Virus record (IMG/VR): IMGVR_UViG_3300043411_000942
Coordinates: 62,001-126,000 of that record
Strand: one strand, 5' to 3'
Length of the DNA: 64,000 nucleotides
Positions 1,409 through 59,282 of this stretch are shown piece after piece (position 1 is the first letter of the stretch; each line of letters begins with the position of its first letter). The position numbers and the translations under genes were made by a program. The notes below the pieces were generated by a model. That model saw nothing but the letters and a program-made list of their open reading frames with translations, was not told the DNA's origin and made no database searches.

Positions 1409-1651
1409 ATGAACGACTCAAGCTACCTCGCTCTCTGGCAAGCTGGAAACAACGAGGGGGACGGCTACATCCCCGACTTCGGAGGCGATGACGTGCATGC
1501 AGCTGCCGCAGCCTATGAGGGTGAGGGGGCCACCGTGATCCACTGGTCTACCACGGACGATGACGTGACGGTTCTGGACTACTACGGTGTAATGATCGCC
1601 ATTGGGGACGCTCACGGTCCTTGGGCTGTCACGATCGACCGGGGTATCTAA
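1409..1651 (+). CDS. hypothetical protein
   Basis: start moved to ATG 1409 behind promoter 1373-1401. Confidence 0.7.
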   Translation: MNDSSYLALWQAGNNEGDGYIPDFGGDDVHAAAAAYEGEGATVIHWSTTDDDVTVLDYYGVMIAIGDAHGPWAVTIDRGI

Positions 1652-9530: not shown

Positions 9531-10088
9531 ATGCTCCCCCCTACCGTTTTATACTACTCACGCTTTCTGCGAGAACCCGGCCCGGTCTTTGACGCGCTCC
9601 GGGTTGCTTCGGCTTGGGAGCAGAAGAGCGTCACAATCTATGGGAAGTCGATTCCGCAGCCTCGCTTGATCGCGTGGTACGGGGACCCTGGTACCTCGTA
9701 CACCTACTCGGGGCTCAGAGTAGACCCCAACCCCTGGTTCCCTGCCCTGGCCTCTCTGAAGGCTGAGGTTGAGCGAGCTACGGGAGCCACCTTCAACTCG
9801 GTACTTCTTAACCTGTACCGTAACGGGTCGGATTCCGTAGCCTGGCATGCAGATGATGAGCCAGAACTTGGCTCGAATCCTACGATCGCCTCGGTAAGTC
9901 TTGGAGCTACACGTAAGTTTCAGCTCAAGCACAACCTTACCAAGGAGGTTTTCAGTGTAGACCTAACCTCAGGTAGTCTTCTCGTGATGTCTGGGAGCAC
10001 CCAGGAGACTTACAAACACGCGGTTTTGAAGACGACACGTCCTGTTGGAGAAAGGATCAACCTGACGTTTAGGCGAATTTTCAGTTAA
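9531..10088 (+). CDS. alkB: AlkB-family 2OG-Fe(II) dioxygenase (ALKBH2/3-like)
   Basis: QPRLIAWYG, NSVLLNLYRNG, WHADDE (HxD), YKHAV, RINLTFR. Confidence 0.93.
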   Translation: MLPPTVLYYSRFLREPGPVFDALRVASAWEQKSVTIYGKSIPQPRLIAWYGDPGTSYTYSGLRVDPNPWFPALASLKAEVERATGATFNSVLLNLYRNGSDSVAWHADDEPELGSNPTIASVSLGATRKFQLKHNLTKEVFSVDLTSGSLLVMSGSTQETYKHAVLKTTRPVGERINLTFRRIFS

Positions 10089-10112
10089 GCCTCCCGCAAG
10101 GGGATCCGTAGG
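10084..10112 (+). promoter_or_regulatory. class-1 promoter for the HicA-like gene and tRNA-Lys
   Basis: GTTAAG-N17-CGTAGG. Confidence 0.8.
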
Positions 10113-10132
10113 GACTCTCAGAGGCACTGAAA

Positions 10133-10345
10133 ATGTCGGACTATCGAAAGTGGATCAAGAAGGTGGTTGCGCTTGTGAGTAAGCTCGGCTGGAAGGTCGA
10201 CCAGAAGAACCACTACAAGTTCAAGTCCCCTAATGGCGGCACGACCGTGATCGCGCCTTGTACTCCCAGTAGTTACAACGCCATGTGGACGGTTCGACGA
10301 GATTTTCGTAAGGCTGGGCTCGAATTGGACATGAGCAGCCTCTAG
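10133..10345 (+). CDS. HicA-like dsRBD-fold RNase/toxin homolog
   Basis: LGWKVDQKNHYKFKSPNGG..V..P.TPS...RRDFRKAG resembles HicA; no HicB nearby. Confidence 0.6.
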   Translation: MSDYRKWIKKVVALVSKLGWKVDQKNHYKFKSPNGGTTVIAPCTPSSYNAMWTVRRDFRKAGLELDMSSL

Positions 10346-10352
10346 TGTATTC

Positions 10353-10425
10353 GGGACCTTAGCTCAGTTGGTAGAGCTGCGGACTTTTAATCCGTAGGTC
10401 GTGGGTTCAAGTCCCACAGGTCCCA
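10353..10425 (+). tRNA. trnK: tRNA-Lys(UUU), CCA not encoded
   Basis: GGGACCT/AGGTCCC acceptor; D arm GCTC-AGTTGGTA-GAGC; anticodon arm GCGGA-CTTTTAA-TCCGT; T arm GTGGG-TTCAAGT-CCCAC. Confidence 0.97.
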
Positions 10426-10580
10426 CTAACTGGATACTGTCTTAGCGAAGGTGTGCACCCTGAGCTATGATCGGACTCCAGCGAGGAGCTACCCGTTCCC
10501 ACGTAGATAGAGTGAGTCGCCCATCCCCCACTGGACTTGTTAAGCCCAACCGGATGGTCAACGACCCACTTAAACGGTAG

Positions 10581-15693: not shown

Positions 15694-15733
15694 AATTTAG
15701 TTAAGCCCGGACCCTCTACCTACGTAGGTCTCT

Positions 15734-16012
15734 ATGAAGGGCAGGTTCCAAATGAGTCTTCAAGGTTATTACGACAACTTCCGCTCGGGTTACTGGGCAG
15801 ACTCTGACCCCTCCAAGTGCGCTTGTCACGGTCACGGTTACGCTCTTTCGGAGGTGGATACTTGGCACGAGTGCCCCATCCACCATGTGAAGGGGCAGCG
15901 TCATCCGGAAGATGATTGCGATGGCACGGAGGAGGGCTGCTACGAGGTTGAGGCTGCTCCAGCCTACAAGCCAGAACCTGTAACGTTCGATGACGATTCT
16001 GTTCCGTTTTGA
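15734..16012 (+). CDS. small Cys/His metal-binding protein with acidic tail
   Basis: ATG behind promoter; CACHGHG..WHECPIH. Confidence 0.7.
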   Translation: MKGRFQMSLQGYYDNFRSGYWADSDPSKCACHGHGYALSEVDTWHECPIHHVKGQRHPEDDCDGTEEGCYEVEAAPAYKPEPVTFDDDSVPF

Positions 16013-17823: not shown

Positions 17824-18646
17824 ACCAGGCGAAACCATCAAAGTTGCAGTAGCCAACAACGTCCTTCTAGAGGTTCCCATTTGGGAGGCTCACTTTCGAG
17901 GATCCAATTGGATGGCTGTAATTAACGTAGACGGGTCCAGTCCTGGAGGGCTGAGTCGTAGGTTTATGCCAAGGGGTAAAGGGGATTGCTTCTACTTGAT
18001 TGAGCAACTCCAGCTCTTCGACCCGATCGAATTTGGTGCGGACTACACGACCTCGGTTGGAACTAAGAAACGAGACCGTTGGTACGGTGTGGTCACTGCG
18101 GTCACAGACGGGCACCTAAGCATCGAGAGGGCCTCGACAGGGGTAGCGGCCGTCCTGAGAGCCAAAGAGGCTAGAGAGTCCCCTAGAGATAGAGCAATGG
18201 CCCTTCGTGAGACCCTTCAGGCTCACCTAGACCAGGTGGTTGCCATTGAGAGGGAAATTCACGAGCTTGACCGGACCCCCGTGGAGTCTGAAGTGCCAGC
18301 AGATCTACCTACGGTACCGTTTTCCGTAGAAGACTACCAAGCGCCTGCGGTCCCACCTACAGCTGAGCAGCTAGCCGATTTGTTTAGCGAAGTCGAGCGT
18401 ACAAAAGATTGCGTTGTGAGAGTTTGGGTATCCCCAACGAGTGTTCGAGCCTTGAAGTCACTTCCAGGCTTTACCCTGTGCTCTAGCCTCACCCCTGAGG
18501 TCTTTGGAAGTCTCTGGGGAGCAACGTTTTTAGTATCCCCAAAGATCCCACATGGGAGGGTATACCTTACCCCAGGCAAACTTGAGGATGCCGATCTGGT
18601 ACCAGAGTGGACCCCGGTACCAGAAGAATTGCAATCTTGGGGTTAA
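17804..18646 (+). CDS. fusion of a phage hypothetical N-domain with a capsid-protein-like C-terminal segment
   Basis: N: SPGGLSRRF..IEFGADY..RWYGVV. C: LADLFSEVER..VVRVWVS..GSLWGATFLVSPKIPHGRVY. Confidence 0.55.
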   Translation: MTTKSTKPGETIKVAVANNVLLEVPIWEAHFRGSNWMAVINVDGSSPGGLSRRFMPRGKGDCFYLIEQLQLFDPIEFGADYTTSVGTKKRDRWYGVVTAVTDGHLSIERASTGVAAVLRAKEARESPRDRAMALRETLQAHLDQVVAIEREIHELDRTPVESEVPADLPTVPFSVEDYQAPAVPPTAEQLADLFSEVERTKDCVVRVWVSPTSVRALKSLPGFTLCSSLTPEVFGSLWGATFLVSPKIPHGRVYLTPGKLEDADLVPEWTPVPEELQSWG

Positions 18647-18676
18647 AGATTCCTGACCCTCTCCGTAGGGTAGAGT

Positions 18677-18997
18677 ATGAAAACCACCACGAAGTTTACG
18701 GTTGAGCGCGACGGGCGTGAAGTTACCCTCCTGGTGGAGGCGGATTACTACCCTGGTTCTCCAGGAAGGACCTACGGACCTCCTGAGAACTGCTATCCCC
18801 CTGAGGGGTCGGAACTCGTGATCTCCAAGCTGACTCTGAACGGCCAGGTTTGGGATGACGCCCTCACGGATGAGGAAGAGGACGACATCGTTAACACCAT
18901 GTTGATGGAGGCGGACGCCGCTGAGGAGGAAAGTCCGGAGTACGAGGAATACGAGTACGACGATCCCCCCTGCGAGGACTACTGCGACTACGAGTGA
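18677..18997 (+). CDS. acidic hypothetical protein
   Basis: ATG behind promoter; PPENCYPPEG motif; D/E-rich tail. Confidence 0.75.
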   Translation: MKTTTKFTVERDGREVTLLVEADYYPGSPGRTYGPPENCYPPEGSELVISKLTLNGQVWDDALTDEEEDDIVNTMLMEADAAEEESPEYEEYEYDDPPCEDYCDYE

Positions 18998-19006
18998 GCC
19001 TCAAAC

Positions 19007-19043
19007 AAAAGCCGAGTGTGGGAAGTCCCACACTCGGCTTTTT
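19007..19043. terminator. bidirectional terminator between convergent blocks
   Basis: AAAAGCCGAGTGTGGG-AAGT-CCCACACTCGGCTTTT. Confidence 0.9.
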
Positions 19044-19076
19044 ACGTACTGGAAAGAAGTATGAACCCTAGGAACC

Positions 19077-19267
19077 CTAAATCCAAGTCGCCTCTTTCCT
19101 CCTCAGCCGAGGAGGCTCGTGAGGAGCTTCTGCATAGACTTCACACAAAGCGAAGAAGGGGGAGGTTGCTAGAACAGATCTACACTCTCGCTGGGGAGCT
19201 TCTGCATTTCAAGAAGACAGTCCCCAAGAACGACTCGCACGGATTCAGTGGAGGGTTGGTTGGACAT
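19077..19267 (-). pseudogene. remnant of an N6A/N4C DNA methyltransferase N-terminus
   Basis: MSNQPSTESVRVVLGDCLLEMQKLPSESVDLF* (TAG 19169-19171), continuing in a shifted frame as LATSPFF. Confidence 0.7.
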
Positions 19268-19553
19268 TCGCTGCTCGAAGAGCCTCTAGGATTTTCTCGG
19301 CCTGGTACTTCACGAAGCCAGCTTGAATTACATCCTTCGGGGGGAGGTCTAGTCCTTGGGTAAGTAAACAACTTACCGTCTCCTGGATGTAGGACTCTCG
19401 TATACGTTCTGAATCTACCGCCCACACCCCATCAGGGCTCGTAAAGCCTACCCTTGTGCGCGATGGTAAGGTAGGGTGGACTTTGGATGCACCATGAATT
19501 CGGCATTGCTCTGTAAGCTTAGTGAGGAATTCCTCGAAGGTGTAAGTGCTCAC
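19245..19553 (-). CDS. hypothetical protein
   Basis: 102 aa ORF in - block. Confidence 0.55.
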   Translation of the reverse strand: MSTYTFEEFLTKLTEQCRIHGASKVHPTLPSRTRVGFTSPDGVWAVDSERIRESYIQETVSCLLTQGLDLPPKDVIQAGFVKYQAEKILEALRAANVQPTLH

Positions 19554-19897
19554 TTGACCAGCCTTGTATTGGCTACAACCATAGCCTCTTTGTGCGTTAG
19601 ACCTTCAAGATAGCCAGGACTAGCCCCCACAACCAAGAAGTTACCGTACATTGCTCTCCCGCTAGGTACGAAGCGATTGAACGGTAGGCGCTGAATGTCT
19701 CTGTTTGAAAGGACACTGAACACCCCCTCTCGAATAAGCTCTAAGTTTGCACCACCAAGGAGGAAGTGAGCTTCCTGGAAGAGACGACCGTCACGTCGAC
19801 CTAAGTCAACGATTTTAGGCTTATCGCCAACTCGGTATAGTACGGCCTTAGACTTGGGACTAGGAGTTGAGTTTAGGTTCGGGTTGGTTTTATGCAA
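19550..19897 (-). CDS. DUF3846-like hypothetical protein
   Basis: LLGGANLELI...LPFNR...GNFLVVG pattern. Confidence 0.5.
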   Translation of the reverse strand: MHKTNPNLNSTPSPKSKAVLYRVGDKPKIVDLGRRDGRLFQEAHFLLGGANLELIREGVFSVLSNRDIQRLPFNRFVPSGRAMYGNFLVVGASPGYLEGLTHKEAMVVANTRLVK

Positions 19898-19906
19898 GTC
19901 AATGCC

Positions 19907-20131
19907 TCAGTCTCGATCTGGTAGCTTACCGGTCACTGCCAACAACACCCAGGTTGCGAACATGAGAGCAAGATACATGGCCGGAGGAATGAAAACTACG
20001 TACCCTCTTACCATAGGGATAACGCCTACGACAAGGAGAGCTACTAGGAGAAAGTTGGTAAAGTACGCAACAAAGAAGGTTGAGATGACCCACTTAACAA
20101 GCGCATCAGATTCAGCCTTGCTTTGACTCAT
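19907..20131 (-). CDS. small membrane protein
   Basis: two to three hydrophobic segments. Confidence 0.6.
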   Translation of the reverse strand: MSQSKAESDALVKWVISTFFVAYFTNFLLVALLVVGVIPMVRGYVVFIPPAMYLALMFATWVLLAVTGKLPDRD

Positions 20132-20586
20132 GGGTAACGGTTACCTGTCCAGGTATTTGTTGTAAGATCCCACTCCATCGGGGTGTCGATAATGACCTCT
20201 GGGTCCTTCCGCCAGGTAGAGAGCCGAAAGGTTCCTCTGGGGCCTATAATCTGCCTAGTCTTTTGACTATCTCCTGTATCTAGGTTGAAGAGACCAACCC
20301 AAACCCGTTGAGCTACTGGTAAAAACCCTTCTCGTGGGGCAAGCTGTTTGGCTTCCCATTCGAGTAGCTTCTCTATGGTCACGTCAGCAAACCCTGGTAG
20401 TTCTTGGATGTTGCGGTACCGACACTCGAAAAGCTTTGGGCGGAGCTTTAGCGCGTCAATAACCGCCTGCTTGCACTGAGGGCACCAGGTGCTGTCATTC
20501 AATGGAGCGTCACAACCATGCCCACTTCCTTGGTAGCTGTATCGAGTGCCGCAATGAGAGCAGCGCTTGAGCCGATGAGTTGTCAT
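20128..20586 (-). CDS. N-terminal Zn-finger hypothetical protein
   Basis: CSHCG..Y.YQ.SG.GC..WCPQC; GGTGTA-N9-ATG start. Confidence 0.7.
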   Translation of the reverse strand: MTTHRLKRCSHCGTRYSYQGSGHGCDAPLNDSTWCPQCKQAVIDALKLRPKLFECRYRNIQELPGFADVTIEKLLEWEAKQLAPREGFLPVAQRVWVGLFNLDTGDSQKTRQIIGPRGTFRLSTWRKDPEVIIDTPMEWDLTTNTWTGNRYP

Positions 20587-20594
20587 ACACTCCG

Positions 20595-20771
20595 TTACAC
20601 CAACTTTGACTCAAGCTCCACTGGAGTTGGCTGAAAATTAGGTTGAGATGCCGTAAGCACCCAATTCAAGTAGGCGTCATACCCGATCGTACCAAAGGAC
20701 TTCCACGCAAGAGCTTCACGGGAAGGCTTCTCATTCAGGTTCGGCTTCGGGCAGTCGGGTCGAGTAATCAT
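20595..20771 (-). CDS. hypothetical protein
   Basis: ATG 20771 behind promoter 20779-20807. Confidence 0.6.
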   Translation of the reverse strand: MITRPDCPKPNLNEKPSREALAWKSFGTIGYDAYLNWVLTASQPNFQPTPVELESKLV

Positions 20772-20814
20772 ACCAGTAACTACGAACATTGGACTCAGCT
20801 ACTTAACTACTTTA

Positions 20815-21235
20815 TAGGTAATCTACTTAGCACATGCAGAATAGGTGCGGTTCGACACGCCTAGCCACTTTTGCAGTCTAATGTAGAGCTTCACCAAAGG
20901 GGTTGCCCCCCAACGCACGGGTCTAAAGTAGGAGCCGTAGTAAAATTCGTCTAACATCCGGGACTACTTACGCTAACTCCGCTTGGTAGTCAAATGCTAG
21001 CATGCAGAAAGGCCTACCCGTTTTTAGGTAGGCCTTCTTCCAGGCAGGTGAAGAGACTTGTGGTCTCTTCCGAGGAGCCTAACTCTTGATCAGAAAGCTA
21101 GGGTTCCTCTGCAAGCGGACTCCCTCCGCACGATTATATTCATTGAGGTCTCTTTCATCGCTACAAGGTTAACCTCAGGTAGGACCGAGTCCATACTCTA
21201 GAGGTGCTCTGGTTAAGGTGGCCAACCTCTCCAGT
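20815..21235 (-). ncRNA. candidate ~420-nt structured ncRNA with its own class-1 promoter
   Basis: No ORF over ~25 aa on the - strand; bracketed by promoters 21243-21271 and 20779-20807; hairpins 21009-21036, 21050-21070, GGGG-GCAA-CCCC at 20899-20910. Confidence 0.5.
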
Positions 21236-21242
21236 CATGTTA

Positions 21243-21271
21243 CTTACGTTCGTCTCGTCCTACGCTTTAAC
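21243..21271 (-). promoter_or_regulatory. class-1 promoter upstream of the non-coding structured region
   Basis: GTTAAA-N17-CGTAAG. Other - copies: 20779, 21843, 22871, 24048, 26502, 27663, 29100, 29930, 31173, 32617, 35123, 36455, 37531, 44186, 44844, 60480, 62757, 63090. Confidence 0.8.
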
Positions 21272-21638
21272 CAAGATCTTCGATTTTATCACCTGCGGTT
21301 AGCGTCTCGATCGTGTCTAGGATCCAACGTAGATCTCTACTGGGGGAGTTTAGCTCGATGTCAGACCTATCTTCAAGGTTTGAGCCAGACAGTCGAGCAG
21401 TCTCAGAAAGGAAGCAAAGGTCGAACGACCAACTTTTGGTTGACCATTCTGCTTGAACTCCACCCTCTGGCGTTGGGTAGATGTAAACTCTGGCCTCTAG
21501 GATATCTTCCACACGGGGGAGATACTCTCGTGCTGTCTCTACAGCTGCCCTCGAAGGTGCGAACCCCCAGCCATCTAGCCACCCATCTTTGAGCTTGAGC
21601 AACTCAGTTAGCTGAGCGTTGATCGTTTCCAGGCTCAT
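21267..21638 (-). CDS. hypothetical protein
   Basis: LKDGWLDG.G.AP...YIYPTPEGGVQAEW, a motif recalled from phage proteins. Confidence 0.7.
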   Translation of the reverse strand: MSLETINAQLTELLKLKDGWLDGWGFAPSRAAVETAREYLPRVEDILEARVYIYPTPEGGVQAEWSTKSWSFDLCFLSETARLSGSNLEDRSDIELNSPSRDLRWILDTIETLTAGDKIEDLG

Positions 21639-21835
21639 GACTTACCAAGCTTTGCTAAAGCCAAGGAGTAACCTTCATGTCGTTGACGTTCCAACTCCAA
21701 CTGAGACGCAACGTCCCAACCTTCGAGAAGGGCTGACTCAAGTCGAACGATAGCCTCATCCGTGCTCGCGAGAAGCCTGGAGAGCCTTTCCACTGGGGAG
21801 CCGCGTTGAATCAACCTTGAAGTTACAGTGACCAT
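21635..21835 (-). CDS. hypothetical protein
   Basis: ATG behind promoter 21843-21871. Confidence 0.65.
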   Translation of the reverse strand: MVTVTSRLIQRGSPVERLSRLLASTDEAIVRLESALLEGWDVASQLELERQRHEGYSLALAKLGKS

Positions 21836-21843
21836 ACAATCCC

Positions 21844-22104
21844 CTACGGGTTCGAGGTGATCTTGCTTAACTTTTCTTTCAGCTCTTGAGCAGAAATGTC
21901 GAGTTCGATCAAGCTGCTAAAGAGTGCGAGAACTTCGAGTGTCTTAGAGTGACTCAAAGTAACCTCGTCGAAGGCTGTCTTTGTCGTAACCGCTAGGTGC
22001 TTCCACCTCTCGGTCTCGGATCGCCAGTAGCTAACTTGGGCGCTTTTGTACATGTAGGTCAGCCCGATAGTTACAAGCAAACCAGCGAAAATCAAAACTA
22101 CCAC
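21844..22104 (-). CDS. N-terminal TM protein
   Basis: hydrophobic N-terminus. Confidence 0.55.
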   Translation of the reverse strand: MVVLIFAGLLVTIGLTYMYKSAQVSYWRSETERWKHLAVTTKTAFDEVTLSHSKTLEVLALFSSLIELDISAQELKEKLSKITSNP

Positions 22105-22223
22105 TTAGGCTTCTCCTCTAGACTCAGGTATGTACCGTGAAGTTCACCGAGTAAAGACACGTCTGCCGGATCCCGACTTGATGATCGACTTGGGCGATGG
22201 TGACGCGTGTTGCCATCCAGCAG

Positions 22224-22571
22224 CTAAGGCAACAGACTACGATCTGCATCGGAACTAACCTCTGGACTCAAGTATACCTCTGCCGGGTCCTCTAGAATCA
22301 GACTCAGTCTGGACCTACCTCGAATTTGAATAGGCGGGTTAGGTCCTGGACGAGTCCAATCTAGGGTCTGAGTCGCCATTGTAGCTTCGAGGTGGTCAAG
22401 GTCCCACCCAGCAGCTAAGGCCACAACAACGCCGACCCGAATCGCAGACAACTTCAGAGTATCACCTTCGCGGGGGTACCAGCTAACTACTGGACCCCTC
22501 GCATACTCTGGGAAGGCTGCGAGTACAGCGTTAAAAACTTCAGGGGGCAACTTCATTACTGGCGGGCTCAA
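22224..22571 (-). CDS. hypothetical protein
   Basis: ORF in - block. Confidence 0.5.
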   Translation of the reverse strand: MSPPVMKLPPEVFNAVLAAFPEYARGPVVSWYPREGDTLKLSAIRVGVVVALAAGWDLDHLEATMATQTLDWTRPGPNPPIQIRGRSRLSLILEDPAEVYLSPEVSSDADRSLLP

Positions 22572-22863
22572 CTTCCTCGATGTCGTTGATATCTGCCATA
22601 CACCAGTAGCGACCTCGACCTACCCAAACAATTTGAGGGTTTTGTGCGGGGACCGTTTGACCGTGGAGGGGGTAAGCATCACTGCCAGGCATAAGATGAT
22701 GCACGCGCACCTTACGTCGCTTGGTGTTGATCACGGGGTCACCGTAACCCCCTCGACCCATGTCCACAATCAAGATGTCAGCCTTAAGGGTCACAACATC
22801 CCCCTTCTTAAGGGGGAGCTTACGCTCGTCATGGTAGCCAAGGTACTTTTTGGTGGTGCTCAT
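22540..22863 (-). CDS. hypothetical SH3-like protein
   Basis: ATG behind promoter 22871-22899. Confidence 0.7.
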   Translation of the reverse strand: MSTTKKYLGYHDERKLPLKKGDVVTLKADILIVDMGRGGYGDPVINTKRRKVRVHHLMPGSDAYPLHGQTVPAQNPQIVWVGRGRYWCMADINDIEEVEPASNEVAP

Positions 22864-22924
22864 AGAGTGTAGTACGAGATGGAGGGCTAGGCCCTTAACC
22901 TAGATCGACGGAGACAGGAAGGGC

Positions 22925-22953
22925 TTGATTTTTTCAGACAGGTGCTGTAAGCT
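22925..22953 (+). promoter_or_regulatory. sigma70-like promoter TTGATT-N17-TAAGCT
   Basis: upstream of the lone + strand gene 22986. Confidence 0.45.
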
Positions 22954-22985
22954 AACCCTTAGAAACTCTAACTGAAAAGGTATTT

Positions 22986-23738
22986 GTGTACTCAGAAGAC
23001 GCGTATATTTCCGTGGGTCGACCTGGAGCTGGATCTTGCGTAGTGCGGGCTAAAACGTGGCCTGGAGACGAGAAGCTAATAGAGAGGTTCTCCCGGAACT
23101 ATCCACCAGGCACTATTATCGCGCACAAAGGTTTGCGATGGGTGATTCGGTCAGGGGGAGCACTGGAGGCGGTGGCAGCGACCCCAGCCCTACCAACGAC
23201 CGTGACTCCGAGCTACGTACCTCCAAGCCCCCAAGTAACTGGACCTGGACCTGGACCTCAAGTGCAGCAGCTACCCGTCCAAGTTGAAGTTGACGAAGAG
23301 TTCTTGCTTGAACGCACGAAGCTCCACAGACCTTACGCTCCAGTAGATGTAAAGCCTCCAGTTTTCAGTGAGTACCCTACGCTAGAGGGTCTGGTGCGCC
23401 CAGATACTCACTACCCTCAATACCTCAAGGGTAGTGAGTTAGTGCAGCTAACTCAAAGCGAAGCGCTGGCTCGAATCAAAGAGCTTGAAGCTAAGGTTAG
23501 CCTACTTGAGGCGTATATCCAGAGGTTGGACCCTAATACGAGCGTTGAGACTCCGCCCGTAGCAGATGTTGTAAGCGCTCAACCTACAACCATCAACCCT
23601 GGTGAGGTGTGGGTTTCCAAGGACCCTAGAAGGTCGACTCCATTTACCGTGCAGTCTGTAGATGAAGATAACTTCTACACGACCGCTGGCCGATCAATCA
23701 ACCTTAGCCGCCTCCACTGCTACCGTAGGGTCAGCTAA
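22986..23738 (+). CDS. multi-domain protein with C-terminal SH3-like GEVWxSKDxRR domain
   Basis: C-terminal domain also present in 33731-34372. Confidence 0.65.
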   Translation: MYSEDAYISVGRPGAGSCVVRAKTWPGDEKLIERFSRNYPPGTIIAHKGLRWVIRSGGALEAVAATPALPTTVTPSYVPPSPQVTGPGPGPQVQQLPVQVEVDEEFLLERTKLHRPYAPVDVKPPVFSEYPTLEGLVRPDTHYPQYLKGSELVQLTQSEALARIKELEAKVSLLEAYIQRLDPNTSVETPPVADVVSAQPTTINPGEVWVSKDPRRSTPFTVQSVDEDNFYTTAGRSINLSRLHCYRRVS

Positions 23739-35150: not shown

Positions 35151-36311
35151 CTAAAATCTCGCCTGTTGGGCCAGGTCGATACACAGGCCGTCTATTCTGT
35201 GCAGGTCTGGCTTCTTAGGGAGCTTCGACACCTTAGCCAGCTCGGTTAGCTCCACGTCTTGCTTCGCTGCCCACTCGACAAGCTCGTAATAGTTCCAAGC
35301 CCCTGCTCGAATGCGTAGCAGGTCCTCAGCGTCCGGACGTCGCACAACAACCTTACCTTCAGTGAGGATTTCGCGGCACATTCGTAGGAGTCTCACTAGG
35401 TGCATGGCATGTTTCGTGTCGTACCCAAACTGCTCTTCTAGTTTCGCACGATCTGGATTGCGATTCTTCTTCCAATCTTGAAATTGCTGCCACTCTCGCA
35501 GTTTACTCGTGTAGCGTCGCTCCAAGTCGAGCAACTCAATGAAGTTCGTTGAAAACCCAAGGGAGTTCGCTGCTGCGTTCCAGGTCTTCTCTTCGACGTC
35601 TTTCCAGGACCACTTGGTGATCTCTAGCAGCCTACGGTAGAACTCGTCCTTAATGGATTGCCGGTTGGCTGGACCAAGCTCCTCTAGCTCGTGCCAATTC
35701 CACTCGTCCATGCGCTTATTGATTGTAGCGGAGGCAGCTGCAAGCTGATCTGCCGGGATAAGCGTGTGCTCAGGTAGATTAAACTCTGCTCGTGTTGGAG
35801 GCGCTACAGGAGGAGTCTTAATCCATCTGTAGTGAGTGTTGATTCTCTTGAGTTGTTGAGTCGCATACCCACTGAACGTGTGCTTTGCACGCTGAGAGAG
35901 GAACAGCTCGCGACTCCCCAGGAGGGTTGTCCCCAATGGGGACACGACCAGGTGGTCACTTTCGTCCGTGTAGAGGATCTCAAGAACGTTTGGATTACAC
36001 TCAGCCGCAAGTTTCATGAACTTGCGGAGTTCGAAGATCGTCAAGTCAGGCTCGGACTGAGTGACCTGCTCTACCGTGTTCAAAAACCCTAGGTAGTACT
36101 CACGCGGAGCGATCATGACTCCGCGTAGATCAAGATCGCTTGTAGGGAGGTTCGTCCCATAGGCGTGACTACCGTGACGAGTCAGGTAGATTGTCCGACT
36201 CGGTACCCACGATAAGTTACCTGAATACACGGGCTTCCAATCAAAGAGAAGCGTACTCTTGACTGGGATCAAGTCACTCCTTGGTGTATCCATGGAACCA
36301 CCCTTCTCCAC
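35151..36311 (-). CDS. Pol-beta-superfamily nucleotidyltransferase (Nuc-transf/YcgL-like)
   Basis: HGSHAYGTNLPTSDLDLRGV, NPNVLEIL, YDTKHAMHLVRLL. Confidence 0.9.
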   Translation of the reverse strand: MEKGGSMDTPRSDLIPVKSTLLFDWKPVYSGNLSWVPSRTIYLTRHGSHAYGTNLPTSDLDLRGVMIAPREYYLGFLNTVEQVTQSEPDLTIFELRKFMKLAAECNPNVLEILYTDESDHLVVSPLGTTLLGSRELFLSQRAKHTFSGYATQQLKRINTHYRWIKTPPVAPPTRAEFNLPEHTLIPADQLAAASATINKRMDEWNWHELEELGPANRQSIKDEFYRRLLEITKWSWKDVEEKTWNAAANSLGFSTNFIELLDLERRYTSKLREWQQFQDWKKNRNPDRAKLEEQFGYDTKHAMHLVRLLRMCREILTEGKVVVRRPDAEDLLRIRAGAWNYYELVEWAAKQDVELTELAKVSKLPKKPDLHRIDGLCIDLAQQARF

Positions 36312-42647: not shown

Positions 42648-43880
42648 TCACGAGATGCCCAAGTATCGCATAGCTACTCGCGTCGTTAGGGGTTCGGAGA
42701 ACTTACTCCCAAGTTCCACCTCAACCTGAGCTTCAAGGGCTTGGGGGTTCAAGGTAGGGTTTGCGAGTAGTTGTTGGCGTGCCACCTGGAGTACTACGTT
42801 TCTCTCTTTCGGGGGAATCGAGTACTTGGCGAACAGCCTCTGTTGGTCAACAGGAGGCTTCTTGAGAGCCTCTACAAGAGCTACACCGTCTGAGGGGGGT
42901 AGCGCAAGAAGAAGCACCCTCAGTCGCTGCTGAGCAGCTCTATCGAGGAATGATAGAGGGGTTCGGATAACCCAACCAAGGTCAAGCAAGTCCAGCAACA
43001 GCTCAGCTTGCTTGTCATTCACATTCCTGCCAAGGGCCGCAGCAAAACCTGGCTCTGCCTCCAACATCTCCTTGATAGCGTCCGACAACCCCAACTGCAC
43101 TAGCAGCTCAACGCTCTTCCTTGGGGCAGGTCCCCCCAGGATATCCCCTACGAGGATTGAGCGCACAGCATCCCACGGCATTTTCTTGAGGCTTGGAGCA
43201 TTCTTTCGAATGCTGGCTACCATGTCCGGAGGAATCTTGAATCCGTACTTCGCTACGAACTTGATTGCACGTAGCATTCGGGTGGGGTCGTCTGAGAAGG
43301 TCTTGTCTGGATTCACCGGGGTCTTGAGCAACCTCTCTTCGAGGTGCTGCTTCCCTAGTCCCGTGAGGTCCAAAACCTCAGCTCGATCTGGACCGTGCTC
43401 AAGATCCAGTAAGCGCCACAACAGCGTGTTGAAGGTGAACTCACGCCGCTTGAGGTCCTCTTCGATGGTCGCAGGTTCCACCATGTGGGGCTTGTAGCCC
43501 TTACCACCCTCTCCGCCATAACTCTCCTTACGAGCGTTGGCAATCTCGATTACCTCGCCCTTTAGGTCATGACCGTCAAGGATCCAAGATTCCGAGATAG
43601 AGAGGATTGCGACCCCGTACTGATTGGTCGTCAGGTTGCATCGAGCGGGAATGAACTCCGAAACCTTCTTGGCAAACCAATCCGAGTCTCGGCCCTTCCC
43701 AGCAGCAACGCTGTCAAATACAACGTCGATGTCCTTGATGGGCTCCTTGAGGATCCAGTTTCGGACTGCCCCGCCTACAACGTAGACGTTCTCTGCAACA
43801 CCCAAGGATCGTGCCACCTTGGACAGGAACTTCATCAGGGCGACAGATCGATCGTGTAGGGAAGATGCGGTAATCATCAT
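42648..43880 (-). CDS. cca: class II tRNA nucleotidyltransferase (CCA-adding / poly(A) polymerase family)
   Basis: YVVGGAVRN, KDIDVV, EDLKRREFTFN, FSDDPTRMLRAIKF; no HD domain; C-terminal RVAMRY. Confidence 0.88.
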   Translation of the reverse strand: MMITASSLHDRSVALMKFLSKVARSLGVAENVYVVGGAVRNWILKEPIKDIDVVFDSVAAGKGRDSDWFAKKVSEFIPARCNLTTNQYGVAILSISESWILDGHDLKGEVIEIANARKESYGGEGGKGYKPHMVEPATIEEDLKRREFTFNTLLWRLLDLEHGPDRAEVLDLTGLGKQHLEERLLKTPVNPDKTFSDDPTRMLRAIKFVAKYGFKIPPDMVASIRKNAPSLKKMPWDAVRSILVGDILGGPAPRKSVELLVQLGLSDAIKEMLEAEPGFAAALGRNVNDKQAELLLDLLDLGWVIRTPLSFLDRAAQQRLRVLLLALPPSDGVALVEALKKPPVDQQRLFAKYSIPPKERNVVLQVARQQLLANPTLNPQALEAQVEVELGSKFSEPLTTRVAMRYLGIS

Positions 43881-46480: not shown

Positions 46481-46533
46481 CCTTAGTTTTCTCGTAGGTC
46501 TCCAAGTAAAGACGGATGAATTCTGGTGGTACT

Positions 46534-46551
46534 GGTGTAGCCATAGAGATG
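46534..46551 (+). promoter_or_regulatory. class-2 motif GGTGTA-N9-ATG
   Basis: same geometry at starts 14414(+), 20586(-), 34372(-), 38573(+), 44216(+); N10 at 45195(-); also 518-523 before the ncRNA. Confidence 0.6.
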
Positions 46552-47505
46552 CTCCATCCTAACCCTAAGATGCTGTTACGCATAGCCCAAGGTGACGCCT
46601 TTGGTATGGCGTGTGAATTTCGAACCGACAACCTGAAGGCAGCGTTGGAGTTCGATCGGTATATCCGTCATCCTGAGTGGGGTCCGGAAGCAGGTCATTA
46701 CACCGATGACACTCAGATGTCTATCGCAGTAGCCGAGAGCCTTATCCACCCACAAGGCCGTCGTCCTCCGAAATACGCACGCCCTGAAGACCTAACAAAA
46801 GAGGCTTTTGCTGAGGCCTTCGTCCAAGCATACAAGAGAGACCCACGACCTGGGTATGCGGTAAAGTTCCAGGCCTTCCTAGACTCAGTAAGCTCTGGTG
46901 CCGAATTCCTCTTGAAGATAAACCCGGAGTCAGATAAGAACGGTGCCGCAATGCGCTCCGTTCCGCTTGGCGTTATCTTACACGAACCCAATCTACTAGA
47001 GGTAGCTGCAACGCAAGCGAGCCTGACTCACAACACAGAGGGAGGTATTACCTCTTCTCAGATGGTAGCCCTTGCATCTAGGTTCGCCTTGTACGAGAGT
47101 GCTCCACTCACGGAGATTTTCGATTACATTGGAGACTGGCTACACCTGAGCAACCTACGGTGGGAGGGCGGTCCTGTAGTAGGACCTAACCTGGGGATGC
47201 TCACTGCAAGGGCAGCTATTACCCTAGTAATTGGTGAACCTAACTTACTGAGTATTGCAAAGAAGGCTCTTATCTGGGGTGGAGACACTGACTCTGTGCT
47301 AGCTATCGCCTGGGGTATTGCTAGTGCTCGAAAGGACGGAGCGGAGCTTCCCGACTTCTTCCATAGAGACCTAGAGAACGGACCTTACGGTCGAGACTAC
47401 CTAGCAGGGTTAGGTAGAGCCTTGATGGGTTACTTTGCTCCACCTGGGTTTGCTGCTGAGTTTGTTGTAAGCAAGAACGCGGTCTTGCCCCTCAAGAAGG
47501 ACTGA
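46549..47505 (+). CDS. ADP-ribosylglycohydrolase (ARH/DraG family)
   Basis: GDAFG, YTDDTQMS, NGAAMRSVP, GGDTDS; GGTGTA-N9-ATG. Confidence 0.92.
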   Translation: MLHPNPKMLLRIAQGDAFGMACEFRTDNLKAALEFDRYIRHPEWGPEAGHYTDDTQMSIAVAESLIHPQGRRPPKYARPEDLTKEAFAEAFVQAYKRDPRPGYAVKFQAFLDSVSSGAEFLLKINPESDKNGAAMRSVPLGVILHEPNLLEVAATQASLTHNTEGGITSSQMVALASRFALYESAPLTEIFDYIGDWLHLSNLRWEGGPVVGPNLGMLTARAAITLVIGEPNLLSIAKKALIWGGDTDSVLAIAWGIASARKDGAELPDFFHRDLENGPYGRDYLAGLGRALMGYFAPPGFAAEFVVSKNAVLPLKKD

Positions 47506-49362: not shown

Positions 49363-50202
49363 TCAGAACTCTGTACCGAGAGTTGGAACCCAAAGGTCAG
49401 AGGTGTTTTCCCACGTAATGTAATCTGGAGTCAGTAGTGCGAACCCACCATCCCTCCAGTGCTTACCCCATGAATTTTTCACGAGGAAATTGCCGTCTAC
49501 GTACCCTACGATCATCATAGCGTGCCCACCTGCGGTAGCTCCCTTCGGGGGGTCTACGATCGAGGGTCCAAGGCGCTGCAAAAAGGGGTGGTCGACAAGG
49601 GTGCCGAAAACAACGGGGTGCTTTGCTTGCAGTGCCGACTTGATTGCCTCAAGTCGGTCATCTCCAGTCTCCCTGATTCGGTAGTAGGAGTGGATGCGAT
49701 GACCTACCGCCTGACGCATAGCCTTGATGCTAGGGGCCGTGTAGACCTTAGACTCGTCGTAGGCCCAAATGTTCTCGTCGCAGACTCCAAAGCGACTGAG
49801 CACCTCAAAGCAATTTCGGATGTAGGTCCCCTCATCCTTGTCAATGTCACCCTGGCCATCCCCGTCATCGTCCATCATCCCACGAGCTAGAGCGTAGATG
49901 AATAGACGAGAGACCTGAATCGTAGGGCGAGGGCTTCGCTTCTCAGAGACAGCTAGAGTAGCCTCTCGGATAGCGTTAAGTAACTCAATGCTATCTGCTG
50001 TAGCGTTTCCCGCACAGGAGGACAGCCCGAACTGATTGGTCTCAGTGGTGAAGCTAGATAGGTCCACGTCCCCATCCGCCATCACTAGACTTGGCTTGAG
50101 GTTGGTGGTGAAGTCCAGGTCCTTAGCGAGCCAATCGAACTCGTTCCCATTCTCATCAATACCTACAGTAGGGTCTGGCTTATATCCGAATAGAGTGGTC
50201 AT
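49363..50202 (-). CDS. papain-like C1 cysteine peptidase
   Basis: NQFGLSSCAGNA, GGHAMMIVGY, VKNSWG. Confidence 0.9.
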   Translation of the reverse strand: MTTLFGYKPDPTVGIDENGNEFDWLAKDLDFTTNLKPSLVMADGDVDLSSFTTETNQFGLSSCAGNATADSIELLNAIREATLAVSEKRSPRPTIQVSRLFIYALARGMMDDDGDGQGDIDKDEGTYIRNCFEVLSRFGVCDENIWAYDESKVYTAPSIKAMRQAVGHRIHSYYRIRETGDDRLEAIKSALQAKHPVVFGTLVDHPFLQRLGPSIVDPPKGATAGGHAMMIVGYVDGNFLVKNSWGKHWRDGGFALLTPDYITWENTSDLWVPTLGTEF

Positions 50203-58457: not shown

Positions 58458-59282
58458 TTAGACTTCAGCTCTCTCGTTCTTGACGTCGAAGTGCTTGCGT
58501 AGTACCGACTTGATTTGGTCCTTGTACTTCAACCAAGCTGGGTGCGACATCGGGTTGTTCTTTAGGAACGGGATCATTTGGTCTCGAACAATCTCGGCGT
58601 CCGTATACCCCTGTAGGAGCAAGTCAAAGTAAAGGTCCAGGTCTGGAGTGACCCTGGGGTTTACCTTCCTAGCCAATTCATCTCGGATGTTGTCCAAGTC
58701 ACTCTCTAGAAGGTACTTGTCGAGGTGGTCCCAAGCCCCTGGGTCCTCAATGACCCTCTCAACGCCTTCCAGGTCCGTCATGGAATCCGTGATACTCTTG
58801 TCTTCATCCCCTCTGGTGTCATGCCTAAACTGGTCGATAGCTAGCATGTTGAGGGCCGTAAGGATATAGCTTTCTGCTCTCTTTAGAGGTTGACCTGATA
58901 GGTTCCGTAGGGAGTCAGGCTTAGCTAGAAACTTGAGCATTAGCTCCGTCATCAGGTCTTCTGCTCGGTTCGGATCGCGATGCTTCATGAGTAGCATCTT
59001 GTAAGCCTTCGAGCCAAAGTTGGCGCCGTAACCACTAGGGATCTTACGGTCCATCTCTCGTGCGTTCTGAGGCTTGAAGTTCTCAGCAGGTTGATCCTTG
59101 ATGGGTGGAAGTCCCTCCACCCCGTTCATCAAGAATAACCCGTAGATAACTCTCCCGAACCCAGCAGCGGGCCCAGCTGCTAGCTTCACTAGAAGGTTAG
59201 CCAGCCTATATCCCCATGGAAGGCTGGCATATACCTTACGACCTAACTCACTAGCGACTCTTACTAAGGCGTGTGTATCCAT
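58458..59282 (-). CDS. ECF-like RNA polymerase sigma factor with N-terminal RVAS motif
   Basis: AEDLMTELMLKF..SYILTALNMLAIDQFR (sigma2-like); LLLQGYTDAEI (sigma4-like). Confidence 0.65.
   Translation of the reverse strand: MDTHALVRVASELGRKVYASLPWGYRLANLLVKLAAGPAAGFGRVIYGLFLMNGVEGLPPIKDQPAENFKPQNAREMDRKIPSGYGANFGSKAYKMLLMKHRDPNRAEDLMTELMLKFLAKPDSLRNLSGQPLKRAESYILTALNMLAIDQFRHDTRGDEDKSITDSMTDLEGVERVIEDPGAWDHLDKYLLESDLDNIRDELARKVNPRVTPDLDLYFDLLLQGYTDAEIVRDQMIPFLKNNPMSHPAWLKYKDQIKSVLRKHFDVKNERAEV

What the first reader, a model, noticed from the sequence alone, without database searches (positions are those of the whole stretch)
20815..21235. ~420-nt promoter-driven non-coding region with multiple hairpins
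Seen: a perfect class-1 promoter (21243-21271, -) is followed only by a 25-codon ORF at atypical spacing and then about 400 nt without a credible ORF, ending at the next class-1 promoter. It contains hairpins AAGGCCTACC/GGTAGGCCTT, GAAGAGAC/GTCTCTTC, GCGGA/TCCGC, GACTAC/GTAGTC and a GGGG-GCAA-CCCC GNRA loop on the - strand. The imperfect repeat TTCTGCATG(TG)CTA occurs twice. Inference: an independent ncRNA cassette occupying a slot normally used by a protein gene.
Basis: partly seen in the sequence, partly recalled or inferred. Interest (0 to 1): 0.62.

Follow-up and report, generated by a model that had tools for sequence, protein, structure and literature searches.

The report
Paired small structured RNA gene in huge phage
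The flagged stretch of this very large wastewater phage most likely holds a roughly 235-base structured non-coding RNA gene with its own promoter and terminator, one of two copies per genome and in no known RNA family, followed by about 190 bases of ordinary spacer; its function is unknown and expression is not yet shown.

Summary
The window is part of a 233-kb fragment of a huge phage found in wastewater and freshwater metagenomes. It is a genome-wide two-box motif, GTTAA-N15/16-TACGTAGG-N7-ATG, with 88 sites against 0-6 in controls.

The site at 21243-21271(-) is a strong but imperfect copy. Behind it, only 21240 to about 21005(-) behaves as a structured RNA:
- It forms five or six hairpins and ends in a -22 kcal/mol terminator hairpin.
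- Its folding z-score is -3.7.

The remaining ~190 nt (21004-20808) folds no better than chance. It holds an unsupported 44-codon ORF.

The decisive new fact is a second copy 22 kb away on the other strand. It also has a promoter box and a canonical terminator, and shares two invariant blocks of 18 and 25 nt. A 380-kb sister phage carries the same two copies. One is a chimera of the two types and sits at a different insertion point.

That excludes coding as the cause of conservation for them. A 13-17-codon micro-ORF is kept in all four copies, so coding is not excluded there.

I found no Rfam match and no relatives beyond this phage lineage. Covariation is thin, expression is unproven and function is unknown.

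The parts
21243..21271 (-). Phage-type promoter. GTTAA (21271-21267), 16-nt spacer, box AACGTAAG (21250-21243). The predicted start is at or near the ATG at 21238.
   Evidence: Position weight matrix score 21.7 bits. There are 88 such sites in the genome against 0-6 in controls. GTTAA overlaps the TAA stop of the upstream 123-aa ORF.
21005..21240 (-). Predicted small structured RNA, copy A, about 235 nt from promoter to terminator.
   Evidence: MFE -87.4 kcal/mol, z = -3.72. 98% identical to the sister phage, while the flanking genes are about 90-95% identical. The paralogue is at G000 61065-61260(+). No Rfam match.
21209..21234 (-). Hairpin P1. Its loop carries the invariant palindrome TGGCCA.
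   Evidence: Pair 2-22 changes G-C to A-U, and pair 5-19 changes G-U to G-C, between copies.
21173..21204 (-). Hairpin P2. Invariant block 1 (18 nt, 21196-21179) forms its top, with apex GGAC-TCG-GTCC.
   Evidence: Block 1 is identical in all four copies. The outer stem differs between copies A and B but stays paired. One compensatory pair (G-C to A-U at 36-56) was counted.
21114..21138 (-). Invariant block 2 (25 nt). It begins with TATAAT and contains hairpin P3, GCGGA-GGGAG-TCCGC (21129-21115). The conserved micro-ORF starts at the ATG at 21143, 2 nt upstream of the block.
   Evidence: Identical in all four copies. All 5 pairs are invariant. Micro-ORF.
21072..21109 (-). Long imperfect hairpin P4 with loop CTGATCA.
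   Evidence: In the sister phage a C-to-T change turns an A-C mismatch into A-U. Copy B has a hairpin of different sequence at the same place.
21050..21070 (-). Hairpin P5, GAAGAGAC-CACAA-GTCTCTTC.
   Evidence: -11.2 kcal/mol, z = -3.3. An A-to-G change in the sister phage gives a G-U pair. One strain has a change in the loop.
21001..21036 (-). Terminator-like hairpin (10-12 bp, GC-rich) followed by TTTCTGCATG.
   Evidence: -21.9 kcal/mol, z = -5.4. The consensus terminator scan did not list it, because the tail has only 4 T in 8. Copy B has a canonical hairpin plus TTTTT at the same relative place.
20808..21000 (-). Spacer with no structure above chance. It holds the 44-codon ORF (20823-20957), the GACTAC/GTAGTC and GGGG-GCAA-CCCC hairpins, and the second TTCTGCATG copy.
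   Evidence: z = -0.78. The ORF has no promoter hit and no homologues. Its 3' third is read in another frame in the sister phage. It was never called as a gene in the roughly 13 contigs whose gene tables cover it. The codon score was uninformative.
20771..20807 (-). Own promoter of the next gene (GTTAA 20807-20803, box 20786-20779) and its likely start codon at 20771.
   Evidence: 22.3 bits, spacer 16, ATG exactly 15 nt after the box start.

Best explanation
Window 21240 to about 21005 (minus strand) is a stand-alone gene for a structured small RNA of about 235 nt. It is one of two paralogous copies that this huge phage keeps.

Proposed steps:
1. Transcription is driven by the phage's own two-box promoter. 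That promoter is probably read by host RNA polymerase carrying a phage-encoded sigma-like factor. It also stands in front of the phage's tRNA genes.
2. The transcript starts at or a few bases before 21238.
3. It folds into hairpins P1 to P5.
4. It ends at the GC-rich terminator hairpin at 21036-21009.
5. The RNA acts in trans. Its two invariant modules are the docking surfaces for a partner, most likely a protein. These modules are the top of P2 (GGAC-UCG-GUCC) and the single-stranded UAUAAU segment followed by hairpin P3 (GCGGA-GGGAG-UCCGC). The palindromic loops of P1 and P4 may add RNA-RNA pairing.

What is shown: the promoter class, the conservation pattern, the paralogy, the non-coding nature of the two blocks apart from the micro-ORF, the hairpin potential, and the independence from neighbouring genes.

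What is inferred: that the region is transcribed as a discrete RNA, where its ends lie, that it acts in trans, and that it binds a partner.

The 190 nt that follow (21004-20808) are spacer, not part of the RNA.
For: Promoter:
- 88 sites against 0-6 in controls. This site scores 21.7 bits.
- 32 of the 88 sites lack an ORF of 40 or more codons at the expected distance. Many of them lie in the tRNA cluster or upstream of tRNA-Lys.

Paralogy and orthology:
- Exactly two copies in G000: 83238-83040(-) and 61065-61260(+).
- Exactly two copies in the 380-kb sister phage G001.
- Blocks of 18 and 25 nt are identical in all four copies, while the rest of the 5' part is only 78% identical between copies A and B.

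Not coding:
- The 25-codon ORF is absent in copy B and is 11 codons long in another frame in B'.
- The 34-codon ORF reads block 2 in a different frame in B and stops after 11 codons in B'.

Structure:
- z = -3.7 for A and -3.8 for B.
- 92% of cells are paired, against 36-43% when the partners are slid.
- All four substitutions between A and its orthologue fall in linkers, or improve or keep pairs. A-C becomes A-U in P4, and A-U becomes G-U in P5.
- G-U pairs lie on the promoter's strand.

Unit boundaries:
- Terminator hairpins of -21.9 and -21.1 kcal/mol close both copies.
- Each downstream gene has its own promoter: 22.3 bits at 20807 and 19.8 bits at G000 61272.

Independence:
- The B-type copy sits at different insertion points in G000 and G001.
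- B' is a chimera, 93% A-like in its 5' part and 87% B-like in its 3' part.

Gene callers left this 478-nt gap empty in all of the roughly 13 contigs whose gene tables cover it.
Against: - No transcript evidence. The RNA-library runs could only be laid as assembled contigs, which cannot show ends, strand or even transcription.
- Only three effectively independent sequences exist (A type, B type, chimeric B').
- 22 of 30 core pairs never vary and only 2 show compensatory change. 25 of 500 shuffles do as well.
- The opposite strand also folds well, z = -2.9.
- Copy A's terminator lacks a canonical U run.
- A 13-17-codon micro-ORF starting at an invariant ATG is present in all four copies.
- No partner was identified. 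The two phage genomes encode no CsrA, Hfq or ProQ, and the window's own record (G000, the only one searched for it) no Ro/TROVE protein.
- No complementary target in the phage genome stands out above chance.
- More distant kin (G002-G004) have no detectable copy.
Confidence: 0.5

Rival explanations
1. Cis-acting leader RNA. The conserved hairpins modify the transcribing polymerase or switch between alternative folds. This would be antitermination as in the put RNAs of phage HK022, or an attenuator or riboswitch-like device. It would control read-through of the hairpin terminators into the genes downstream.
For: - Both copies lie directly behind a promoter box and directly before terminator hairpins, with same-strand genes downstream.
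- There are two copies per genome, as with putL and putR (from my own knowledge).
- GGACUC in block 1 is complementary to GAGUCC in block 2. The 5' strand of P4 resembles the 5' strand of the terminator. Alternative pairings are therefore possible (read from the sequences).
Against: - Each downstream gene has its own strong promoter between the terminator and its start codon (20807, 22.3 bits; G000 61272, 19.8 bits). Read-through is therefore not needed.
- The genes downstream of B, B' and A are unrelated, and the B-type copy has moved relative to its neighbours.
- No riboswitch or leader family matched.
Confidence: 0.18
2. DNA-level module. The repeat is a mobile regulatory cassette or recombination substrate of a hyperplastic early-gene region, comparable to the promoter-plus-stem-loop cassettes described for T4-type phages. 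Alternatively it is a protein-binding or replication-related site. Any RNA made from it would be incidental.
For: - The two copies are inverted repeats 17-22 kb apart in both genomes.
- B' is a recombinant of the A and B types and sits at another insertion point.
- The surrounding region is mosaic between strains.
- The opposite strand folds nearly as well.
Against: - Stems are kept by compensatory and G-U changes rather than by sequence. This fits a single-stranded transcript of one strand better than a duplex DNA site.
- The unit is framed by a promoter and a terminator in both copies.
- Plain recombination substrates do not need 18- and 25-nt invariant cores while the neighbouring sequence drifts to 78% identity.
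Confidence: 0.12
3. Small-protein coding. The conserved signal reflects a micro-ORF of 13-17 codons that starts M-(N/C)-I-I-V-R-R-E-S-A at the ATG just before block 2. Alternatively, the 44-codon ORF at 20823-20957 is the real gene of this slot.
For: - The micro-ORF start and first ten codons are present in all four copies.
- The 44-codon ORF stays open (50 codons) in the sister phage, with 3 synonymous and 3 non-synonymous changes in its first 30 codons.
Against: Micro-ORF:
- Eight consecutive codons show no synonymous difference between paralogues that are otherwise 22% diverged. This points to a nucleotide-level constraint.
- Its C-terminus and stop differ in every lineage.
- It has no Shine-Dalgarno sequence, and its start is buried between helices (read from the sequences; folds).
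- It cannot explain block 1.

44-codon ORF:
- No promoter hit of 8 bits or more.
- No homologue in phage records or in the genome itself.
- Its last third is in another frame in the sister phage, although the nucleotides there are conserved.
- It was never called in the roughly 13 contigs whose gene tables cover it.
- The codon score is uninformative.
Confidence: 0.1
4. A decayed protein gene or functionless intergenic remnant.
For: - The slot is gene-sized.
- In copy A, one 34-codon frame runs through both conserved blocks.
Against: - The region is more conserved than the flanking genes: 98% against about 90-95%.
- The copies keep promoter boxes and terminators.
- The blocks are invariant between old paralogues while the frames are not.
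- No protein homology was found.
Confidence: 0.04

Closest known systems
Stable small RNAs encoded by large phages next to or among their tRNA genes, for example the T4 species 1 and 2 RNAs (also called RNA C and D). Recalled from my own knowledge.
   Same: - Phage-encoded, non-coding and structured.
- Made by the same promoter type that drives stable RNA genes. Here the two-box promoter also precedes tRNA genes.
- Function unknown.
   Different: - Not located in the tRNA cluster.
- No sequence or Rfam relationship.
- Present as two diverged paralogues, each with its own terminator.
The putL and putR antitermination RNAs of phage HK022. Recalled from my own knowledge.
   Same: - Two copies per genome.
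- Each lies immediately downstream of a promoter.
- Each is built around two conserved stem-loops and is followed by terminators and same-strand genes.
   Different: - put RNAs are about 70 nt and act in cis on host polymerase to express genes that lack their own promoters.
- Here the unit is 190-235 nt, the downstream genes have their own promoters, and the copies have moved relative to their neighbours.
The packaging RNA of phi29-like phages and other RNAs that multimerise through loop-loop pairing. Recalled from my own knowledge.
   Same: - A phage RNA of about 120-230 nt with its own promoter.
- Hairpin loops capable of intermolecular pairing. Here these are the palindromes UGGCCA in the P1 loop of all copies and UGAUCA in the P4 loop of three of four copies.
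   Different: - No sequence or structure match.
- It is not at a genome end.
- Purely inferred.
Promoter-plus-stem-loop mobile regulatory cassettes of T4-type phages, which drive modular shuffling in hyperplastic regions. Recalled from my own knowledge.
   Same: A repeated promoter-containing non-coding module in a mosaic early-type region. There are signs of recombination between copies and a changed insertion point.
   Different: Those cassettes are short, a promoter plus one stem-loop. This unit carries about 130 nt of conserved, multi-hairpin sequence with invariant cores.
Protein-sequestering bacterial RNAs: 6S RNA and the CsrB/RsmZ family.
   Same: - Similar size class.
- Several hairpins with purine-rich GGA-containing loops. 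The P3 loop reads AGGGAG.
- A single-stranded stretch that reads like a -10 promoter box (UAUAAU), read from the sequence.
   Different: - No covariance-model match even at E = 10.
- 7 GGA in 236 nt against about 4 expected, my own count from the sequence, is not convincing.
- No CsrA is encoded by the phage.
- The fold is not the long interrupted duplex of 6S RNA.

Membership tests
Any Rfam 15 family (4227 covariance models) | Score at or above the family's gathering threshold, or at least a suggestive E-value | tested here: not met
   At gathering thresholds the whole window gave only tRNA-Lys. A permissive search (E up to 10) of both copies with flanks gave no hit on either element.
   21.7 bits with a 16-nt spacer. 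The high mode holds 88 sites, against 0-6 in controls.
   The distance is 12 nt, unique among the 88 sites; 47 have exactly 15. The ATG is not conserved in copy B.
Intrinsic (factor-independent) terminator | GC-rich hairpin immediately followed by a U run | tested here: inconclusive
   Copy A has a strong hairpin (-21.9 kcal/mol, z = -5.4), but its tail UUUCUGCA has only 4 U in 8 and the consensus scan lists nothing. Copy B has a hairpin of -21.1 kcal/mol plus UUUUU.
Conserved structured RNA (general criterion) | Statistically supported covariation in the proposed helices | tested here: inconclusive
   - 5 distinct sequences and 30 pairs.
- 22 pairs are invariant and 2 have changes on both sides.
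- 25 of 500 shuffles reach the observed score.
- 92% of cells are paired, against 36-43% for slid partners.
Protein-coding gene | An open frame conserved across homologues, with substitutions biased to synonymous sites | tested here: not met
   The 25- and 34-codon ORFs change frame or are truncated between copies. Only a 13-17-codon micro-ORF is shared, and it shows no synonymous variation. The gap was not called in the roughly 13 contigs whose gene tables cover it.
HK022 put-type antitermination RNA | Cis action on the transcribing polymerase that allows expression of promoter-less downstream genes | not testable with these tools
   Only the layout could be compared. The downstream genes have their own promoters, which argues against the need for it.
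CsrB/RsmZ-type CsrA sponge | Many GGA motifs in hairpin loops, and a cognate CsrA | tested here: not met
   - 7 GGA in copy A and 5 in copy B, counted by eye from the sequences. Most lie in stems.
- No CsrA in either phage genome.
- No model match.
- The host is unknown.

The most novel reading that the evidence does not exclude
The two RNAs are host-takeover decoys. The strictly conserved single-stranded UAUAAU mimics the non-template strand of a -10 promoter element. The adjacent GGAGG-containing hairpin mimics a ribosome-binding site. Together they would titrate the host's housekeeping sigma factor and/or 30S subunits. The phage's own genes would escape, because they use a different promoter and largely leaderless starts. 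The palindromic loops of P1 and P4 would let the RNAs pair with each other into dimers.
Probability: 0.06. Interest if true: 0.8.

Novelty: new member of a known kind. Interest (0 to 1): 0.45.

Why it matters
Huge phages are known mostly from metagenomes, and their non-coding repertoire beyond tRNAs is almost unexplored.

- This is a well-delimited candidate RNA gene. It has a defined promoter, terminator, paralogue and invariant hairpin modules.
- The phage is recurrent in wastewater, sludge, runoff, groundwater and freshwater metagenomes from many studies. Material for RNA-level tests exists.
- The invariant modules give direct handles for pull-down of a partner.
- The case shows that the phage's own promoter class serves stable RNAs as well as leaderless-type mRNAs. 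This helps annotation of the whole lineage.

If the RNA proved to be a decoy for host transcription or translation factors, it would be a new takeover strategy. As it stands, it is a plausible but functionally uncharacterised new RNA family of narrow distribution.

Tried and rejected
1. Known RNA families: nothing in Rfam at gathering or permissive thresholds.

2. Similar DNA or protein in 50,697 phage records: nothing.

3. Wider homologues by exact blocks:
- In IMG/VR, the 24-mer of block 2 found only the sister phage.
- 14-mers gave chance hits. These included a conserved gene end in many T4-like contigs that merely shares 14-20 nt.
- In JGI metagenomes, the two-block pattern gave 0 hits, and the 19-mer gave 6 chance hits in high-GC soil contigs.
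- In GTDB genomes, a 21-mer hit one orthologous coding region in two Flavobacteriales MAGs with no flanking similarity. I judge this to be chance.

4. Syntenic route through the flanking 123-aa protein: it gave close strains only. The distant protein homologues sit in bacterial chromosomes without the element.

5. Covariance model R1 on three more distant huge-phage records: no copy. The neighbouring genes are mostly absent there, and the one homologous locus has no non-coding gap.

6. Strain variation from Logan and NCBI contigs: only two haplotype groups and a few single changes. This is too little for covariation statistics.

7. Expression: the RNA-library runs could only be laid as contigs of about 90% identical relatives. 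No ends, strand or level can be read from them, so this is not evidence either way.

8. Antisense targets: 12-mer complementarity to the phage genome is near chance. The one site shared by both copies lies inside a large coding region.

9. Phage-encoded RNA chaperones or partners (Ro/TROVE, CsrA, Hfq, ProQ): none found. Ro/TROVE was searched in G000 only.

10. TTCTGCATG as a phage terminator signal: rejected, because it does not recur behind hairpins elsewhere.

11. A host-type sigma-70 promoter at 21310-21283: it matches the consensus scan but is lost in the sister phage.

12. Codon-usage scoring of the short ORFs: not discriminating at this length.

13. Two literature searches gave nothing relevant.
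Full report
**Context**

The window is bases 62001-126000 of a 232,937-bp IMG/VR virus record (G000), estimated to be about half complete.
- GC content is about 52%.
- The record carries 46 tRNA genes, an intein-containing large ORF, a class II ribonucleotide reductase and a RecD-like helicase.
- Near-identical DNA occurs in wastewater, sludge, runoff, groundwater, aquatic and freshwater metagenomes from many studies.
- A sister phage, IMGVR_UViG_3300020049_006032 (G001), is 379,936 bp with direct terminal repeats and is about 90-95% identical over this locus.

**The promoter class**

Counting k-mers and inspecting their contexts exposed a two-box motif, GTTAA, 15-16 nt, TACGTAGG, about 7 nt, ATG.
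- An iterated position weight matrix finds 88 sites above 14 bits in the genome. The reversed sequence gives 6 and shuffles give 0-2.
- In 47 of the 88 sites an ATG lies exactly 15 nt after the start of the second box. A -10-like element would then put the transcript start at or just before the start codon, a leaderless-type layout. This is my inference.
- 32 sites have no ORF of 40 or more codons at that distance. Many lie in the tRNA cluster, and one lies 270 nt upstream of tRNA-Lys in the window. The same promoter type therefore appears to drive stable RNA genes.
- A 274-aa ORF at window 58458-59282(-) gives weak matches to sigma factors: PHROG 1740 at E = 5e-5 and Pfam Sigma70_r2 at E = 3e-3. 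That fits a phage-specific sigma reading this motif.

**Checking the observation**

Several points need refinement.
- The promoter at 21271-21243(-) scores 21.7 bits but is not perfect. Its box is AACGTAAG, and its ATG follows after 12 nt, the only such spacing among the 88 sites.
- The next promoter (GTTAA 20807-20803, 22.3 bits) places the downstream gene's start at 20771, not 20789.
- Gene calls on independent contigs leave a 478-nt gap here in every contig whose gene table covers it. It is the largest gap in those loci.
- The first part, 21240-21005(-), folds with z = -3.72. The second part, 21004-20815(-), has z = -0.78.
GACTAC/GTAGTC acquires two mismatches in G001.
- The hairpin before the second TTCTGCATG is weak in both phages, z about -0.5.
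- TTCTGCATG does not recur as a post-hairpin signal elsewhere.

**The decisive finding: a paralogue**

A search of the phage's own genome with the region found a second copy at G000 61065-61260 on the plus strand. This lies about 0.8 kb left of the window and 22 kb from the first copy, in inverted orientation.

G001 has the same two copies, 17.5 kb apart. Neither genome has a third.

All four copies share two invariant blocks:
- an 18-nt block forming the top of hairpin P2, with apex GGAC-TCG-GTCC, at window 21196-21179;
- a 25-nt block that begins with TATAAT and contains hairpin P3, GCGGA-GGGAG-TCCGC, at window 21138-21114.

Outside the blocks, copies A and B are 78% identical in the 5' part and 59% in the 3' part.

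Each copy has a TACGTAGG-type box at the same distance upstream of P1. In copy B of G000 the matching GTTAA has decayed, and a complete promoter (21.4 bits) lies 28 nt further upstream.

Each copy ends in a strong hairpin. A is -21.9 kcal/mol followed by UUUCUG. B is -21.1 kcal/mol followed by UUUUU.

**Coding is not the constraint**

- The 25-codon ORF that begins at the predicted transcript start exists only in the A type. B has no ATG there, and B' has an 11-codon ORF in another frame.
- The 34-codon ORF that begins in block 1 reads block 2 in a different frame in B and stops after 11 codons in B'.
- The only frame shared by all copies is a 13-17-codon micro-ORF starting at an invariant ATG 2 nt before block 2. 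Its eight block-2 codons show no synonymous difference between otherwise diverged paralogues, and its end differs in each lineage. I keep it as a minor rival.

**Structure**

Single-sequence and alignment folds agree on this layout:
- P1 at 21234-21209, with loop UGGCCA.
- P2 at 21204-21173.
- A short helix GCGAU/AUCGU closing the linker and abutting P3.
- P3 at 21129-21115.
- A long imperfect P4 at 21109-21072.
- P5 at 21070-21050 in copy A.
- The terminator.

Support from variation is real but thin.
- On the five distinct core sequences, 92% of cells pair, against 36-43% when the partners are slid.
- 22 of 30 pairs never vary and only two show double changes. 25 of 500 shuffles reach the observed score.
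- All four substitutions between A and its G001 orthologue in the 200-nt core are in linkers or favour pairing. A-C becomes A-U in P4, and A-U becomes G-U in P5.
- P4 and the terminal hairpin have different sequences in the A and B types but fold at the same positions.
- The core is 98% identical between the two phages, while the flanking genes are about 90-95% identical.
- The G-U pairs lie on the promoter's strand. That mildly favours an RNA of that strand, although the other strand also folds well (z = -2.9).

**Independence from neighbours**

- The genes downstream of both copies have their own promoters and are unrelated to each other.
- The neighbouring ORFs have no informative family matches.
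- The B-type copy lies at different insertion points relative to conserved flanks in G000 and G001.
- The G001 copy is a chimera: its P1-P3 part is 93% identical to A, and its P4-terminator part is 87% identical to B.
- The surrounding region is mosaic between strains.

This supports a self-contained cassette. It also shows recombination or gene conversion between the copies.

**The second half (21004-20808)**

It contains a 44-codon ORF (20823-20957).
- It has no promoter hit of 8 bits or more, and I see no ribosome-binding site in the sequence upstream of its ATG.
- It has no homologue in phage records or in the genome itself.
- Its codon score is uninformative.
- No gene caller picked it.
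- In G001 it stays open, but its last third is read in another frame although the nucleotides there are conserved.

I treat this half as spacer, with perhaps a one-in-four chance that the ORF is real.

**How far the family reaches**

- No Rfam family matches.
- Exact-block scans of IMG/VR, JGI metagenomes and GTDB genomes gave only the sister phage plus chance hits.
- A covariance model of the core (R1) found nothing in three more distant huge-phage records identified through a 1209-aa protein.
- Strain-level contigs added only single-base variants.

The family is, for now, confined to this phage lineage.

**Function**

Nothing here shows function.
- I found no phage-encoded Ro, CsrA, Hfq or ProQ; Ro/TROVE was searched in G000 only.
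- There is no above-chance antisense target in the phage genome.
- There is no usable expression evidence. Contigs from RNA libraries of about 90% identical relatives cover the region and its flanks alike.

My best reading is a trans-acting structured RNA. Its invariant modules would be docking sites for a protein, possibly helped by loop-loop pairing through the palindromic loops of P1 and P4.

The rivals are:
- a cis-acting leader or antiterminator, weakened by the independent downstream promoters;
- a DNA-level recombination or regulatory cassette, weakened by pair-preserving changes and the promoter-terminator frame;
- the micro-ORF;
- a decayed gene, which is strongly disfavoured.

**Verdict**

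The ncRNA is about 235 nt rather than 420 nt, it has a partner copy, and it represents a new, narrowly distributed candidate RNA family. Transcription, ends and role remain to be shown.

Noticed in passing
Whole genome G000; in the window for example 277-320, 1373-1411, 15700-15740, 18642-18680, 20779-20807, 21871-21843, 24075-24047: A genome-wide two-box promoter motif, GTTAA-N15/16-TACGTAGG, with the start codon exactly 15 nt after the second box in 47 of 88 sites. This implies that many genes are expressed as leaderless or near-leaderless mRNAs.
   Followed up: partly
window 58458-59282 (-): A 274-aa ORF with weak matches to RNA polymerase sigma factors (PHROG 1740, E = 5e-5; Pfam Sigma70_r2, E = 3e-3). 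It is a candidate for the factor that reads the phage promoter motif. An orthologue is present in G001.
   Followed up: partly
G000 61065-61260 (+), about 0.8 kb left of the window start: The paralogous copy of the RNA element. In G000 its original GTTAA box has decayed, and a complete promoter lies 28 nt further upstream (G000 61004). That would add a 5' extension to the RNA.
   Followed up: yes
L003 1165-1404 / L190 3709-3926 (G001 66.3 kb): The second copy in the sister phage is a chimera: its 5' part is 93% identical to the A type and its 3' part 87% identical to the B type. It sits about 2 kb away from the position of the copy in G000. This points to recombination or gene conversion between copies in a mosaic region.
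   Followed up: yes
window 10084-10426 (+); G000 127.6-152.3 kb (right of the window): tRNA-Lys(UUU) lies about 270 nt behind a strong phage promoter. A cluster of 45 further tRNA genes lies just beyond the window, with several ORF-less phage promoters among them.
   Followed up: partly
window 20771-20789 (-): The ORF listed as 20595-20789 most likely starts at ATG 20771. The ATG at 20789 lies inside the spacer of that gene's own promoter.
   Followed up: yes
window 35151-36311 (-), 42648-43880 (-), 46516-47505 (+), 49363-50202 (-): RNA- and modification-related genes: an RlaP-type nucleotidyltransferase of RNA-repair pathways, a poly(A) polymerase/CCA-adding enzyme homologue, an ADP-ribosylglycohydrolase, and a papain-like protease.
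   Followed up: no
G000 190390-193749 (L193), outside the window: A 1119-aa ORF interrupted by an intein with a LAGLIDADG endonuclease domain.
   Followed up: no
L184 2811-4001; L186 2370-3353 (strain contigs, region upstream of the 80-aa gene that corresponds to window 1409-1651): About 1 kb without any called gene in some strains. It has no copy of this RNA element and was not examined further. The whole region differs in gene content between strains.
   Followed up: no
window 21283-21310 (-): A sigma-70-like promoter match with an extended -10 box lies just upstream of the phage promoter. It is lost in the sister phage, so it is probably fortuitous.
   Followed up: partly
L040-L153 (many IMG/VR contigs): The 14-mer from block 2 also occurs at the conserved 3' end of a gene in many T4-like phage contigs (protein ending ...YSENRAEGDL). 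This is a coding-sequence coincidence, not a relative of the element.
   Followed up: yes
window 19000-23000: Near-identical DNA is present in runs from at least 10 studies of wastewater, sludge, runoff, groundwater, aquatic and freshwater metagenomes. About 90% identical relatives appear in a wastewater metatranscriptome assembly.
   Followed up: partly
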